In this document: positions 41,519-50,801 of the stretch, in pieces
How the letters are laid out: every line of letters starts with the position of its first letter
Position numbering within the stretch: position 1 is the first letter of the stretch
Origin: Dimorphilus gyrociliatus
Taxonomy: Eukaryota; Animalia; Annelida
Direction of reading: 5' to 3'
DNA: 64,000 bases
NCBI GenBank assembly: GCA_904063045.1
Contig: CAJFCJ010000020.1
Coordinates: 62,001 to 126,000 of the forward strand
Notes under the pieces: generated by a model
The model's database searches: none
The model's input: the letters and a program-made list of their open reading frames with translations, nothing else
What the model was told of the DNA's origin: nothing
Program-made: the position numbers and the translations under genes

Positions 41519-42598
41519 ATGGCGAAAAATGCTACCGAATCACCTTTGTGTCTATCAAAGAATCGGCCTTTAGACAAGTTCATATATATCTATGGTATAT
41601 CCGTAGTAGCCTTTTTTGGTATAATAGGGAATACTTTAACCTACATCATCCTAACGAAGCAGAAAACGACTAAAGGGAAAACCTCCCTAACAATTTACCT
41701 CATGAAAGTTTTATCCCTTACCGATTCATCATTCCTCGTAATTGCGGCTTGGTCATGGATTATGCCTACGATCGCAATCGACTATAGAAAAACCTCTTTA
41801 TGGAAATTTTACCTGCTTAAAGTTGTTTTCCAGCCAATGGGTTCTATAGCTGTTATGATTACGAATTATACTTTAGTGGCTCTATCTGTCCATAGATTTC
41901 TAGTAGTTTGTTATCCAATGAAAAAGGGTCTATGGCAATCTAAGATGAATATCAATTTTGTTCTACTTGGTATTATTATTTTCTCAATTGGTTTTAATGC
42001 TCCTCGATTTTTCGAAGAGAGAATTGATTATTCAAGAAAAGTATTTATTACTTGCTTCAACAAAAGCGTTCATATGACAACAGCGACCGGAATTCAGAAC
42101 ACATATTACAACTGGATATACATGTTTTTCTTCAGAGCTGCTTTCAGACTAGTTATACCCTTTATACTTATCTTTTACTCGAATTACAAGCTCCTTAAAA
42201 CAGCTAAAAATCTGGGTAAAGTAGCCCACCAGTCGACAATTGACGGTCCTATAGCTGATTATAAAAGAAAAAGGGAATACTCTTTGAGTGTGATGATGGC
42301 AAGCCTTTGCGCGTCCTTTTTACTCTTTCAAATACCAAACGCAGCCGCATCCGTTTTACAAATACCGTCTTTTCTATTACCAAACAGGAATTATTCGAGA
42401 ATCTATGCGTTTTTAGGCCCTATAGGCAATTTTCTACTCACAGTAAATTCTGCTGTAAATTTTATTATTTACTATGCTTCGCATAGTCAATTTAGATATT
42501 CGGCTAAAGAAATACTCTGTAAAAGAATTATTAGAAGAAAACGTCGTGCCAAGCAATCTGTAATAATCTATACACTAGTTGATTCTCTGCACGACTAA
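41519..42598 (+). CDS. Peptide-type class A GPCR, FMRFamide-receptor-like, intronless, 359 aa
   Basis: TM1 GIIGNTL, TM2 LSLTD, TM3 ALSVHRFLVVCYP, TM4-ECL2 FNAPRFFE, TM5 IPF, TM6 FQIPN and TM7 NSAVNFIIY. The PRFFE and NSxVNFxIY motifs are typical of the FMRFamide/myosuppressin/SPR receptor group. Confidence 0.9.
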   Translation: MAKNATESPLCLSKNRPLDKFIYIYGISVVAFFGIIGNTLTYIILTKQKTTKGKTSLTIYLMKVLSLTDSSFLVIAAWSWIMPTIAIDYRKTSLWKFYLLKVVFQPMGSIAVMITNYTLVALSVHRFLVVCYPMKKGLWQSKMNINFVLLGIIIFSIGFNAPRFFEERIDYSRKVFITCFNKSVHMTTATGIQNTYYNWIYMFFFRAAFRLVIPFILIFYSNYKLLKTAKNLGKVAHQSTIDGPIADYKRKREYSLSVMMASLCASFLLFQIPNAAASVLQIPSFLLPNRNYSRIYAFLGPIGNFLLTVNSAVNFIIYYASHSQFRYSAKEILCKRIIRRKRRAKQSVIIYTLVDSLHD

Positions 42599-45500: not shown

Positions 45501-45777
45501 GAGAGGACATTACCGTGTGATGGATGACTTTCTTAACTGTACCGATAGATGGCGTTGTAACAATAAAATTTCTAAGCCTTCGGAAGTTATTGATTAATAT
45601 TAGGCCATTTTATATTAGCTATCTATTTTAATCATAGATTAAATTCACGCAATAAGTGTAATTTAGAAAATAGTTGCTTAGGCGTTTTTGTCATATATAA
45701 TTACTTTAAACGCTTATAAATGATCCATTGAACCATAAATTTTTGGAATATACTTGTAGATTATCTATAAAAAAAAG

Positions 45778-46876
45778 ATGATAAACGGCAATAACATGTT
45801 TACAGTCGATGAGACTCTTAATATACTAAAAAATATATTGTATATAGAAGAAAGCGATATAGAAGAATATAGAAAAGGAAAAAATCAATTGGAATTTTTA
45901 AATAAGATAATAAGATCATTTCAAGAGAATATACCCTTTCATAACATATTCGCTTTGGCATCAACAAGAAAGGCGAGGTTTGTATTCTGTATTAAATATC
46001 TTTTTTTTTTGTTTTTTAAAAGAAAAACTGTATATTATATACTATATATTTTTTATTTTTAACAAACTAGGCCTTCTTTAGATGACATTAAAACGAGAAT
46101 ACAAAATGGTTCGGGTGGCTTGTGCTTTGTTAACAACGTTGGAATATATTTTCTATTAGATTCTTTAAATTTTAATGTAAGTCTAGCATTGTCCAGTGTG
46201 TCCTCTCCGGATAATCATTTAGTTGTTTTGGTGAACATGGGAAATGAAAATAAGAGTTTAGAAAGTTCAGATAAAGTTAATTTGTAAGCTACTTTCTTTT
46301 CCATTTTTAATCAGAAATGAATAAAGTGACGATTCCTAAAATAACTGTTTCAGACTTTTAGAAAATTTCTACTTAGTAGAATGTGGATGTGGCTATCCTT
46401 CTTTCACAGCTGTACCGTTGAAAGGCCTAATTGAAGAAGGCTCTGAGAGTGAAATTTACAAGGAATCATTCTTGACGTACAAATTCGAAAGAGACGGCGA
46501 CCTAATTTTAAGAATGCATGGAAGAGGGTTCATAGAACCGAAAACTCATCAAGCCTCAAAAGGCACAGATTTCAAACGGTTCTATGATTTTCGTACAACG
46601 GCAATTAAGAGTATTGATGAATTACTTCCATATTTTGATAAAGTGTTTAACGACGAAAATGAGGCTTCTTTCATATGTAATATAAGAGCAATAAGATTCC
46701 CATCAGGCAAAGCTATTGGTATGAGGGATAATTTCCTTTTAGAAGAAGAGAATAACGTGCTAAGAACTAGAGAATTGAAAGACAATAATGATATAGTTAG
46801 ACACTTACAAATAATTTTACCAAAAATTCCACTGTCTGAATGCATTCAAGCTGTCCAAAGGCTTTATAATAATTAG
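45778..46876 (+). CDS. nat: Arylamine N-acetyltransferase (NAT) family protein; exons 45778-45977, 46071-46283, 46354-46876
   Basis: IPFHNI (IPFENL-like), GGLC (catalytic Cys, codon 46123), DNHLVVLV (catalytic His, 46216) and YLVECGCGYP (normally YLVDVGxG). Two GT-AG phase-2 introns (93 and 70 nt) keep the frame. Confidence 0.88.
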
Positions 46877-49800
46877 ATTAACTACATAGATATAAATAAA
46901 AAAAAGACTCTAATGACTAAGTATTTTCCATTAAGCACTTGTTAATTCTTGTAAATAAGTTCCTTTATAAGTGTTATGATATGTTTGCCTTTCTCATAAA
47001 AGAAACTGTTTTGTATATCATCCTCTTTCAATAAATAACCAACATTTGTGAGTTTTAGAGATTATGGGTAAAGTTCACATGAGTATAGGTATCCTTCTTA
47101 TCTGCTACATGTGTTCTACGTAGAGAAAAAAACAACTTGCAAACATTTTCTTATTCTTTTTCTTCTTCTTTTTATTGATAAAATATTTTCCCTCGTTTTA
47201 CTTTCTTTTTTTAAACGTAAATTAAGTTTAATAGTTTCTTTTCACCTCCAAAAGGCAACTTTGAGTTATAACTTCCAACTTTGGCTTTCTCAGCAATTAC
47301 AGTTTATAAGAAGGCTTTAGATCTTACAGTAATGCAGTTAGTCGTAACGAAACGACCTAGCACTCAAGTTGTTTGCCATAAGGATGTATTCTAGACATGG
47401 AAGAGTCTTACATAACAATGGCTAATGACGAAAATTCATTTTTCTACGATAATTGAATATTTATTAAAGTATTCAAGTTAATTTATCTGATAAAAATTAT
47501 ATAAAATCATGTTTTTTATGCTAAAAGACCTTGAAAAAGTTAGTATTGTTCGCCTAGAAGATAACAAGGGGTATTTTCAAGTGTAAATGAGAAGGGTAAG
47601 ACATTTACGATCGTCAATCATCTTATAATTTAATGAATGAAAACGCTTATTATCATTATCTTTTAAAACGCCAACCTATCACTAAAGAATGCTACACAAA
47701 TGGCTTTATTAATATCTATCAATCTATATATATGATATACGTATATAGAGAAACAAAGAACTACTTAGACGACATACTGAAAGAGTAGCACTTTTATTTG
47801 TTTGGTTGTTCCCTATACTTCCTATTGGTTAAAATTAAGCGTAAAAGAGTCAATTTTTTATGCATATTTACAAAAAGAATACAGTAATTTAGGAGGCTTA
47901 TTTCTTTATTTTAAGCCTCTATTTGACAATTCATTTGTTAAATTGGAGTGTACAACTGGGACTTTGTTTTTCCCAGAAACTGACAAAGTGTTGAATATCA
48001 ATTAATTTGTATTTTATTTCTTTCACATTCTATGCTTTTTTTTATGTTTTGTTTAATTATAAAGCTTCCTATTGAGTTAAACAACAAAAGATGTAAAAAA
48101 TGGAGTTATCTTTTACTAATTTACGACAAAAAGATATAGAGAAATTGTTAAATTTTAAACGAAAAAATGGATTTTGATCAGTAAATAATTACTCTTTTTC
48201 GTTTTATAGAGGACGAACAACGAGGAGAGAGAGAGAGAGAGAGAGATAAAGTGATAGAAATGATAGAGAGCTAGGTAATTAACGGAAATTGTCCTTTATC
48301 TTTGAAATGCGAGACGTAGGGAAAATGATTAGAATACTTTAAATTTGTTTAGGAAATTAATCAAAAAATCGATAATTTTTTAATTATCTTGCATTGATTA
48401 GTTATAAGGTAAATGATATTAAGGAAGTAGTTTAAAAATCACATTAATTACGTGATAAAAAATATTCTCCATAGTCTATAGACCCTAATAGGCAAAACAT
48501 TATAATATTTGCCGTGTAAACCTAGACGTCGAATGGTACAGCAACTATCCTTGTTGGTAAAAATTGTATATTATATCCTGATGACAATAGCTATTTTCTT
48601 TGATAGTATACAGTATAAGGGTAAAATAAGCTTTCTAGCATTTTTAAGACGTTTGAGCCTTTTTAATATGTCTTTTTCAATTCTTGAGGTCAGATTGAAG
48701 AACTTTAAGAAAGGCCAAGTAAGATTAAATCAAGATGAAGAGGAAAATTTTACTCTTGTTCATATAAGAGCTTTGAAATGAAGGAATTATAAGAATATAA
48801 TTCTAGAGTTTTCCATTTTTCTCTAATAAAACATTCAAAGAGTACTTTCAAGTCTTTAAATAATCTTACTTAACAAGACTCGATAGTAAGTAATATAAAA
48901 GCACTAAGTCAAGTGTGAATCGATAATAAGATCGGGCAGACGTCTACCAGAGCAGATAACATTGCCGTATAAATAGATTGAATTCGAGGTAAAGCTTTTT
49001 ATAGATACTTTTTTTAAAATGCCATCATTAAATGGATTTACTCTCACATCCTAGCGACACTGTTTAAACAAGACAAACTTTACATAGTCTTCATTCCAAT
49101 ACTTTCCAACAGATGGCGTGAATGAATTGAGAGGAATGTCTTAGAAGGAGGAAGTAATACTTTAATTACATAGTTATACACTTTGAATATACAGTAGCAT
49201 GTGCGATAATATTTACCAGCAAATAAACAACTGAATAAGGGATAAACACATACATACAGCATATATCTTTTCAAATATATTACAACAGTATAGATGAATT
49301 TATAAATATTCGTACAACAGCACAAAGATGTAAGAAAAATTATAACAACTAATGGATGATTAGATTAAAGAGATAGATAAAAGAAAGTGTGTGACACAAT
49401 TTTTACTGCAATATTTTTGTTGGAAGGATAAAAATCGATTCACATCAATTTATCACTTCGTGACATATTCTAAGTGCCCTAACTAAGATGATAAAATATA
49501 AGCTTAGAAGAAATTTTCGATCTCAATGTCAGCTAGATTTATTAAACTCGACTTCTTTTCAATGAACGAACTAAACGAAAGAATAAAAATCACTTTTCTT
49601 TTTTTTTTATTTAAAAAAACAAGTTTCTCCTAAAAATAGAGTTTTCAATTAAAGTTCTAAAATTAATTAAATAACCAAAACAACTCTAATTTCAAAGTAA
49701 TTTATAGTTCATTTCTTAGTACCACTTGGAATATTTTTATATATAGATAAAATACATTATAAAAGGAAGAGAGAAAGATAGAGAGGAGGAGCAGGGGCAG

Positions 49801-50611
49801 GAGCAGAAGGAGGTAGAGCAATCAGAGTCATTCATAAGAGTATTAGTACAAAACTTCTTCATCAACTAAGTTTCTTTTCAATTCTGCTGTGCTTACACAT
49901 TTCGCTATTTTTACCTTCCTTTTTACTAGCAATAAGAAAAAGCTGACCTATAATTACTTTAACAATATTCAACTTCATAATTATACGTTACATATGTTTT
50001 TTTAAATAAGATATATCCAATTTCATTTTGTTTACTATTGACAATTTTTAACATTGAATGAGAACAATCTATTGTATTTTACTGTATAATTCTTATTAAA
50101 TAACTAAAAGTTAGAGGATTAGATAGAAATATATTAGGGTTAACTGCGTAATGCGAACCGGTAGAAAAGTTTATCTTATCTGATGTAAATCGACTGCCTA
50201 AGATTGATATACCGTACTTGAGTTAATTTGTTTGTCGAAATGGTTTACAAAGATCTTTTATTACGTAAGGACTAAAAAGATAGGGTTAATAACCAAAGTA
50301 TATGAAAGGATGACAGAATGTTTTTGTACATGTCTTTTTATATTTTCATTTTTGTAATATTGGTTTTTTATATCTGTTTATGCGGTAATTAGTGTTATTA
50401 TTTAGCAAATGGTCTATAATTTACATAAAATCAATAGGAATGGGATCCTTTTTCAATTTCTTTCCCAAGTGATTTGAGATAATATTTGGAAACGTAACAA
50501 TAAGTTATTATTTGTACAACCGTCTATGTACTTTTTTCTAAGGGCTTTTTAAGTAAAGATATGATTTAAGCTTGATGAAAAATCCTCCAGATTTATTATG
50601 TTTTCCTTAAA

Positions 50612-50801
50612 TTATTCCAGTGCATCTTCAAGATAGGAAAGGAGATACCGTTGCTGTTGAAGAAGATTCATAGATATCTGGTCATTTGTTTTCAGGTTAC
50701 ATTCCATGGAATTTCTCATCGGTCCAATGAAATCTCTAGCTAACCAGATGTTGTGTACTATTGTATGGCTAATAATTTCACGCGTTAAAGAACGTCTATA
50801 C
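50612..50801 (-). CDS. Candidate terminal coding exon of an unresolved gene
   Basis: Acceptor aaaatacag/ followed by 62 sense codons and TAA (YRRSLTREIISHTIVHNIWLARDFIGPMRNSMECNLKTNDQISMNLLQQQRYLLSYLEDALE). GC is higher than in the flanks. No recognised family. Confidence 0.35.

What the first reader, a model, noticed from the sequence alone, without database searches (positions are those of the whole stretch)
46123..46393. Animal arylamine N-acetyltransferase with an apparent Cys-His-Glu catalytic triad
Seen in the sequence after splicing: Cys (TGC 46123, GGLC) and His (CAT 46216, DNHL), and in the YLVDVGxG motif position YLVECGCG, with GAA (Glu) at 46379-46381 where Asp is expected. The His-to-acid spacing is also about double the usual ~15 residues because of a loop insertion spanning intron 2. 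Established: NATs use Cys-His-Asp almost invariantly, and a natural active Cys-His-Glu enzyme is known from Bacillus cereus NAT3. Inference: an independent eukaryotic origin of the non-canonical triad, or a shifted or non-catalytic function.
Basis: partly seen in the sequence, partly recalled or inferred. Interest (0 to 1): 0.7.

Follow-up and report, generated by a model that had tools for sequence, protein, structure and literature searches.

The report
Annelid NAT enzyme with Cys-His-Glu triad
This is a real, expressed three-exon gene of the small worm Dimorphilus gyrociliatus for an arylamine N-acetyltransferase-family enzyme whose third catalytic residue is glutamate instead of aspartate, but that swap turns out to be common among the invertebrate and protist relatives of this enzyme, so it is ordinary for its subfamily.

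Summary
A three-exon gene (45778-46876, + strand) encodes a 311-residue protein with Cys85 (TGC 46123), His116 (CAT 46216) and Glu147 (GAA 46379). The His-to-acid spacing is 31 residues.

- **Expression and splicing:** a 1263-nt spliced contig in an independent public run matches all three exons with no mismatch and skips both GT..AG introns.
- **Identity:** the product is identical to a deposited protein, DgyrCDS12283 of Dimorphilus gyrociliatus.
- **Family:** it passes Pfam PF00797 (32.5 bits against a cut-off of 22.8). It folds with pLDDT 91.4, and the 40 best PDB matches are all NATs.
- **Conservation:** a syntenic orthologue keeps the Glu with a synonymous codon (GAG).

Among 68 full-length relatives (one per 50%-identity cluster), the acid column holds Asp 44 times, Glu 24 times and nothing else. 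The tree needs at least 18 Asp/Glu switches. Glu forms occur in molluscs, a brachiopod, a hemichordate, amphioxus, a centipede, a ciliate and dinoflagellates. The Glu is therefore a routine variant, not a peculiarity of this gene.

Specific to this lineage are a 13-residue, low-confidence loop insertion and two introns in a family that is otherwise intronless. I read the protein as an active acyl-CoA-dependent transferase. Its activity and substrate are untested.

The parts
45778..45977 (+). Exon 1 (ATG at 45778; 66 codons plus 2 bases). It encodes the N-terminal helices with the IPFHNI variant of the NAT 'PFENL' motif.
   Evidence: Sequence. The spliced contig in run X2 has 0 mismatches. P0098 is identical.
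45978..46070 (+). Intron 1, 93 nt, GT..AG
   Evidence: The joint 45975->46069 (cut +2) skips 93 nt in the X2 contig. The orthologue L001 has an intron at the same place.
46071..46283 (+). Exon 2. It encodes residues 67-138, including Cys85 and His116.
   Evidence: On its own it hits Pfam PF00797 at E 0.014.
46123..46125 (+). TGC, catalytic Cys85 (GGLC)
   Evidence: The column holds Cys in 66 of 68 relatives.
46216..46218 (+). CAT, catalytic His116 (DNHL)
   Evidence: The column holds His in 67 of 68 relatives.
46261..46283 (+). First part of the lineage-specific 13-residue insertion (residues 131-138, ESSDKVNL), at the 3' end of exon 2
   Evidence: These alignment columns are filled almost only by P0098. 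pLDDT is 59-73 here.
46284..46353 (+). Intron 2, 70 nt, GT..AG, inside the insertion
   Evidence: The joint 46283->46354 skips 70 nt in the X2 contig.
46354..46369 (+). Second part of the insertion (residues 138-143, LLLENF), at the 5' end of exon 3
46354..46876 (+). Exon 3 with the TAG stop. It encodes residues 138-311, the rest of the NAT fold.
   Evidence: The profile search with this exon found 97 relatives.
46379..46381 (+). GAA, Glu147, the acid member of the triad (YLVECGCG)
   Evidence: The X2 contig shows no difference here. The orthologue L001 has GAG. It aligns to the Glu of 4dmo, YLIEVGFG. The column holds only Asp or Glu in all 68 rows.
46370..46513 (+). Block of 48 codons with no amino-acid change and unusually few synonymous changes against the orthologue
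   Evidence: pS is 0.16 here against 0.51-0.71 elsewhere in the CDS.

Best explanation
The gene encodes a working member of the arylamine N-acetyltransferase (NAT, PF00797) family in the annelid Dimorphilus gyrociliatus. By analogy with solved NATs, Cys85 would take the acyl group from an acyl-CoA as a thioester and pass it to an amine acceptor (ping-pong mechanism). His116 would activate the cysteine, and Glu147 would orient and polarise the histidine in the place that Asp holds in the textbook enzymes. The Glu is not a special invention of this gene. It belongs to a subfamily of invertebrate and protist NAT homologues in which Asp and Glu have replaced each other many times. The 13 extra residues between His and Glu form a poorly ordered surface hairpin extension that probably leaves the catalytic core unchanged. 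Shown here: gene model, expression, family and fold, residue equivalence by alignment, conservation, and the distribution of Glu. Inferred: catalytic activity, the ping-pong mechanism, the position of the loop outside the active site, and the substrate.
For: A spliced transcript contig matches with 0 mismatches. The product is identical to the deposited protein P0098. Pfam PF00797 scores 32.5 bits against a cut-off of 22.8 over residues 38-289. The AlphaFold2 model has pLDDT 91.4 and pTM 0.91, with low confidence mainly in residues about 123-140 (the insertion) and about 190-210. The 40 best Foldseek PDB matches are all NAT-family proteins (E 2e-13 to 6e-10), including 4dmo, and the next match is at E 0.03. 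phmmer aligns YLVECGCG with YLIEVGFG of 4dmo, and so does the subfamily profile (E 1.7e-22). The acid column is Asp 44, Glu 24 and nothing else, with at least 18 changes on the tree. Glu forms are named from Saccoglossus, Branchiostoma, Patella, Nucella, Lottia, Lingula, Strigamia, Tetrahymena, Noctiluca and Polykrikos. The syntenic orthologue keeps GGMC, DNHL and YLVECGCG with a GAG codon. dN/dS is about 0.26 at dS about 0.86. P0098 keeps all seven nearly invariant family residues: P53, G82, G83, C85, H116, P153, P294. B. cereus NAT3 with Cys-His-Glu is reported to be active (PMC11213898, citing Kubiak 2013).
Against: No enzyme assay exists for any member of this eukaryotic subfamily, as far as I could find. 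The 13-residue insertion lies between two triad residues and could in principle disturb the site. The canonical Arg of 'RGGYC' is Ser here (SGGLC), and 'PFENL' is PFHNI, so substrate or acyl-donor preference may differ from classical NATs. The relatives were collected with a profile built from exon 3, which itself carries Glu. This could bias the Glu share slightly upwards.
Confidence: 0.75

Rival explanations
1. The protein keeps the NAT fold but has a shifted chemistry. It might use a different acyl donor, as the Fusarium N-malonyltransferase does, or act as an amide synthase or acyl-CoA hydrolase rather than an arylamine N-acetyltransferase. It would still use the Cys-His-Glu triad.
For: The NAT-fold matches include an N-malonyltransferase (7qi3), the amide synthase GdmF (8btm and others) and an N-acyltransferase (8k51). 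The motifs around the triad deviate from the canonical ones: SGGLC in place of RGGYC, and PFHNI in place of PFENL. Pfam's score is only modestly above threshold.
Against: Nothing in the sequence points to a particular alternative substrate. The deviating motifs are shared by the whole subfamily, whose profile still matches classical NATs, including human NAT1, at E 1e-16.
Confidence: 0.2
2. The protein is a non-catalytic NAT-fold protein, either a pseudoenzyme or a binding protein. The Glu and the loop insertion would then be signs of relaxed constraint on the active site.
For: The insertion between His and the acid is unique among the 68 rows and evolves fast between the two dinophilid sequences.
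Against: Cys, His and the acid are all kept in two species that differ at most synonymous sites. The 48 codons from YLVECGCG onwards carry no amino-acid change. dN/dS is about 0.26. The acid column is never anything but Asp or Glu across the subfamily, which is what selection for a carboxylate would give.
Confidence: 0.04
3. The Glu codon or the gene model is an assembly or annotation artefact.
For: None was found. The first-stage reader could not check reads.
Against: The X2 contig, from another study, agrees at every base of the three exons and uses both predicted junctions. The orthologue has GAG at the same place. The deposited annotation gives the same 311 residues.
Confidence: 0.01

Closest known systems
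(BACCR)NAT3 of Bacillus cereus, PDB 4dmo, the characterised NAT with a Cys-His-Glu triad
   Same: It has Glu at the acid position in the same motif context (YLIEVGFG against YLVECGCG). It is the best match among solved structures for both the protein (E 5e-5) and the subfamily profile (E 1.7e-22). It has the same fold (Foldseek E 5e-11)..
   Different: It is bacterial and 265 residues long, with a His-to-Glu spacing of 15 against 31 here. Identity is only about 17%. The Bacillus genes sit in NRPS-type clusters according to PMC11213898. This gene is a spliced animal gene next to a GPCR gene.
Uncharacterised invertebrate and protist NAT homologues. Examples: Saccoglossus XP_002735022.1, Branchiostoma XP_019616289.1, Lottia XP_009055315.1, Lingula XP_013393725.1, Patella vulgata XP_055958681.1 ('YvcN-like'), and Noctiluca, Polykrikos and Tetrahymena proteins
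   Same: They belong to the same subfamily by profile search (E down to 7e-19). They are 25-33% identical over the full length and share motifs (PF[QH]N, GG[LIMV]C, NH, YLV[DE]VGCGYPTF). Many carry Glu..
   Different: Their His-to-acid spacing is 18 (61 of 68 rows) or 15. None has the 13-residue insertion. The six whose gene range I checked (five named, plus P0002) have an uninterrupted coding region, whereas this gene has two introns.
Vertebrate NAT1/NAT2 (for example human NAT1, PDB 2pqt/2ija)
   Same: Same Pfam family and fold (Foldseek E 3e-12; profile E 1.7e-16), with Cys and His in equivalent positions..
   Different: They have Asp122 as the acid, a spacing of 15, and the RGGWC and PFENL motifs. 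They are more distant in sequence from this subfamily than the Bacillus NATs are.

Membership tests
Arylamine N-acetyltransferase family (Pfam PF00797, Acetyltransf_2) | Whole-protein score above Pfam's gathering threshold | tested here: met
   P0098 scores 32.5 bits against a cut-off of 22.8, residues 38-289 on profile positions 2-227 of 240. Single exons alone do not pass.
Arylamine N-acetyltransferase family (Pfam PF00797, Acetyltransf_2) | NAT fold | tested here: met
   The AF2 model has pLDDT 91.4. The top 40 Foldseek PDB matches are all NAT-family structures, with TM-scores (by target) of 0.64-0.81.
Arylamine N-acetyltransferase family (Pfam PF00797, Acetyltransf_2) | Catalytic Cys in the GGxC motif | tested here: met
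   Cys85 in SGGLC. The column holds Cys in 66 of 68 rows.
Arylamine N-acetyltransferase family (Pfam PF00797, Acetyltransf_2) | Catalytic His | tested here: met
   His116 in DNHL. The column holds His in 67 of 68 rows.
Arylamine N-acetyltransferase family (Pfam PF00797, Acetyltransf_2) | Asp as third triad member in the 'VDV' motif (motif list in PMC11213898) | tested here: not met
   The residue is Glu147 (VEC). A carboxylate is kept, and Glu is a known active variant (4dmo)..
Arylamine N-acetyltransferase family (Pfam PF00797, Acetyltransf_2) | N-terminal 'VPFENL' motif | tested here: inconclusive
   It is present as IPFHNI. Pro, Phe and Asn are kept, and Glu is replaced by His. The subfamily consensus is PFQN.
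Arylamine N-acetyltransferase family (Pfam PF00797, Acetyltransf_2) | Acetyl-CoA-dependent N-acetylation of arylamines or hydrazines | not testable with these tools
   This needs a recombinant enzyme assay.
Cys-His-Glu NATs (type: B. cereus NAT3, 4dmo) | Glu at the position equivalent to the catalytic acid | tested here: met
   The pairwise and the profile alignment both place Glu147 on the Glu of YLIEVGFG.
Cys-His-Glu NATs (type: B. cereus NAT3, 4dmo) | Triad geometry: Glu carboxylate hydrogen-bonded to His, and His next to Cys | not testable with these tools
   The model's coordinates are not exposed, so no distances could be measured.
Cys-His-Glu NATs (type: B. cereus NAT3, 4dmo) | Common descent of the Glu with the Bacillus enzyme | tested here: inconclusive
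   Within the eukaryotic subfamily Asp and Glu switch at least 18 times, so a shared Glu says little about descent. No bacterial sequences were included in the tree.

The most novel reading that the evidence does not exclude
Two readings remain open. First, the Cys-His-Glu triad, published as unique to one Bacillus enzyme, may be a common natural state of a large, biochemically untouched subfamily of invertebrate and protist NAT homologues. In that subfamily the acid toggles freely between Asp and Glu, and the subfamily is closer in sequence to Bacillus NATs than to vertebrate NAT1/2. Second, within that subfamily the dinophilid annelids have put two introns into an otherwise intronless gene. 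One of these introns sits inside a 13-residue insertion between two catalytic residues. That pattern would fit an intron gain that left part of the inserted DNA as coding sequence.
Probability: 0.4. Interest if true: 0.45.

Novelty: new member of a known kind. Interest (0 to 1): 0.3.

Why it matters
For this gene alone, little. It is an already deposited, automatically named NAT homologue, and its Glu is normal for its subfamily.

The family-level picture is more useful. About a third of the sampled eukaryotic relatives carry Cys-His-Glu, and sister proteins differ at this site. This gives NAT enzymologists natural Asp/Glu pairs in which to test how much the length of the acid side chain matters. 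It also shows that Asp should not be used as a filter when annotating NAT genes outside vertebrates and bacteria.

The two introns and the insertion that straddles one of them are a small, testable case for how introns arise in a compact animal genome.

Tried and rejected
- **Single-exon family scans:** these gave only a sub-threshold NAT hit for exon 2 (E 0.014) and nothing for exons 1 and 3. Exon 3 alone has no meaningful PDB sequence match. The family call therefore needed the full-length deposited protein.
- **Word search with exon 3 (173 aa):** it found only an ORF fragment of an orthologue, because the full protein (311 aa) lies just outside that tool's length range. I repeated the search with the open frame window:46340-46873, which adds five codons of intron 2 and is 178 aa long. 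This brought in P0098.
- **Paralogues in the window:** none (tblastn).
- **Model coordinates for triad distances:** no file was available.
- **RNA explanation for the low synonymous change at 46370-46513:** there is no Rfam match at E up to 1 and no excess folding energy on either strand (z -0.07 and 0.04).
- **Literature:** four searches found the B. cereus case and microbial and vertebrate surveys, but nothing on Glu in invertebrate NATs. The Kubiak 2013 paper itself is not held.
- **Earlier notes of this scan:** nothing on NATs.
- **Recent bacterial transfer or contamination:** rejected. The gene has spliceosomal introns, lies in a syntenic block shared with a related species, and has relatives across animals and alveolates.

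Full report
**What is in the sequence**

The region 45778-46876 on the + strand reads as a three-exon gene.

| Part | Coordinates | Note |
|---|---|---|
| Exon 1 | 45778-45977 | ATG at 45778 |
| Intron 1 | 45978-46070 | 93 nt, GT..AG |
| Exon 2 | 46071-46283 | |
| Intron 2 | 46284-46353 | 70 nt, GT..AG |
| Exon 3 | 46354-46876 | TAG stop |

TGC 46123-46125 is the Cys of GGLC. CAT 46216-46218 is the His of DNHL. GAA 46379-46381 is the Glu of YLVECGCG. In the 311-residue product these are Cys85, His116 and Glu147, so the His-to-acid spacing is 31 residues.

**How the spliced product was handled**

Exons were searched singly by reference. A word search with the open frame around exon 3 returned a deposited protein, P0098. 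That reference, window:46340-46873, is 178 aa and includes five codons of intron 2. I chose it so that a 311-residue protein would fall inside the tool's length range. P0098 is NCBI DgyrCDS12283 of Dimorphilus gyrociliatus, 311 aa, named arylamine N-acetyltransferase by UniRef. Its sequence is exactly exon 1 + Arg + exon 2 + Leu + exon 3. Its gene range of 1099 nt on contig CAJFCJ010000020.1 of assembly GCA_904063045.1 equals my model. All full-length work used P0098.

**Expression, splicing and the codon**

Run X2 belongs to a different study from the probable source sample. Its kind is not on record. It holds a 1263-nt contig that lies on 45700-45977, 46071-46283 and 46354-46950 with no mismatch and skips the two introns at GT..AG. 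A contig without the introns is best explained as mRNA. This confirms both junctions and the GAA codon.

A contig in run X8, from another organism label, is spliced at about the same places. It carries 242 unalignable letters where 239 are expected, which suggests an orthologous transcript with a diverged exon 2 that is one codon longer.

**An orthologue**

The only close protein hit to exon 3 was an ORF fragment, P0001 (73% identity). Its contig L001 is collinear with the window over at least 5 kb at about 69-85% nucleotide identity, so it is the orthologous locus of a related species. It has the same three exons of the same lengths, with GGMC, DNHL and YLVECGCG. Its Glu codon is GAG, so the residue is kept through a synonymous change.

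Summed over the exons, dN/dS is about 0.26 at dS about 0.86. The loop between His and Glu has the same length but a largely different sequence.

**Family and fold**

- Single exons barely register. Exon 2 hits PF00797 at E 0.014, and the other two give nothing.
- The full protein passes Pfam's threshold, with 32.5 bits against 22.8 over residues 38-289.
- With a 68-sequence alignment, AlphaFold2 gives pLDDT 91.4 and pTM 0.91. Confidence is low only at the termini, at about 123-140 (the insertion) and at about 190-210.
- The 40 best Foldseek matches in the PDB are all NAT-family structures (E 2e-13 to 6e-10). The next match is at E 0.03.
- By sequence, the best solved structure is 4dmo (E 5e-5). 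Its PDB title names the 'unique Cys-His-Glu' triad of B. cereus NAT3. The alignment puts YLVECGCG on YLIEVGFG.

**How unusual is the Glu?**

A profile of exon 3 and its orthologue was searched against 1.84 billion cluster representatives. It found 97 relatives at E up to 0.001. I aligned the 67 of at least 260 residues with P0098 (alignment A2).

| Column | Content in 68 rows |
|---|---|
| Cys | Cys in 66 |
| His | His in 67 |
| Acid | Asp in 44, Glu in 24, nothing else |

A maximum-likelihood tree built without that column needs at least 18 Asp/Glu changes. Strongly supported sister pairs differ: P0008 Asp and P0009 Glu are two hemichordate proteins, and P0032 Asp and P0036 Glu are both from Lottia gigantea.

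- **Named Glu forms:** Saccoglossus, Branchiostoma, Patella caerulea and P. vulgata, Nucella, Lottia, Lingula, Strigamia, Tetrahymena, Noctiluca and Polykrikos.
- **Named Asp forms:** Glandiceps, Gigantopelta, Liolophura, Lottia and Haliotis.

The sampled relatives pass PF00797. The subfamily profile matches 4dmo best (E 1.7e-22), then B. anthracis NAT C. Human NAT1 follows at E 1.7e-16.

The Glu is therefore a routine state in this subfamily.

Two caveats apply. The 35% figure is for this subfamily and for clusters, not for species. The query profile itself carried Glu.

**What is specific to this lineage**

The His-to-acid spacing is 18 in 61 of 68 rows, 15 in four, and 31 only in P0098. The extra 13 residues are placed by the aligner at 131-143 (ESSDKVNLLLENF). 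They are the only sizeable insertion in the protein and they straddle intron 2.

The coding regions of the relatives from Lottia, Lingula, Patella, Saccoglossus and Branchiostoma, and of P0002, are uninterrupted. The Dimorphilus gene and its orthologue have two introns. An intron gain that also added coding sequence would explain this. That is inference only.

**Function**

I read the protein as an active acyl-CoA-dependent transferase that uses Cys85-His116-Glu147. The grounds are:

- conservation of the triad and of all nearly invariant family residues;
- purifying selection;
- expression;
- the reported activity of the Bacillus Glu enzyme (PMC11213898).

Activity, acyl donor, acceptor and triad geometry are untested. 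A shifted substrate or acyl donor is a live alternative, because the NAT fold also houses malonyltransferases and amide synthases.

**Literature**

Within the held library I found the Bacillus case and surveys of microbial and vertebrate NATs, but no description of Glu in invertebrate NATs. The original paper, Kubiak 2013, is not held.

**Verdict**

This is a new member of a known kind and of low to moderate interest. The worthwhile points are at family level: frequent Asp/Glu toggling, and the link between the introns and the insertion.

Noticed in passing
window 46370-46513 (exon 3 codons 6-53): Against the syntenic orthologue L001 this block has no amino-acid change, and only 5 of about 31 synonymous sites differ (pS 0.16, against 0.51-0.71 in the rest of the CDS). 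There is no Rfam match and no folding signal on either strand. The same block probably accounts for the many runs of other organisms that hold about 9% of the sampled words. Unexplained.
   Followed up: partly
window 45978-46070 and 46284-46353; loci L002-L006: This gene and its orthologue have two short introns, whereas the coding regions of six relatives (Lottia, Lingula, Patella, Saccoglossus, Branchiostoma, P0002) are intronless. Intron 2 sits inside the only large lineage-specific insertion. This may be an intron gain with partial exonisation.
   Followed up: partly
window 41519-42598 (+): An intronless 359-aa ORF about 3 kb upstream is a rhodopsin-family GPCR (PF00001, E 1e-14, 54.9 bits).
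   Followed up: no
window 48651-49559 and 50118-50776; L001 3436-5992: Further blocks downstream are conserved with the related species at 74-79% nucleotide identity. They are probably exons of the next gene and were not examined.
   Followed up: no
Alignment A2 / PDB search: The profile of the invertebrate and protist NAT subfamily scores higher against the Bacillus NATs (4dmo, 3lnb) than against human NAT1/2. One mollusc member is named 'YvcN-like' by NCBI. The relation of this eukaryotic clade to bacterial NATs was not tested on a tree.
   Followed up: no
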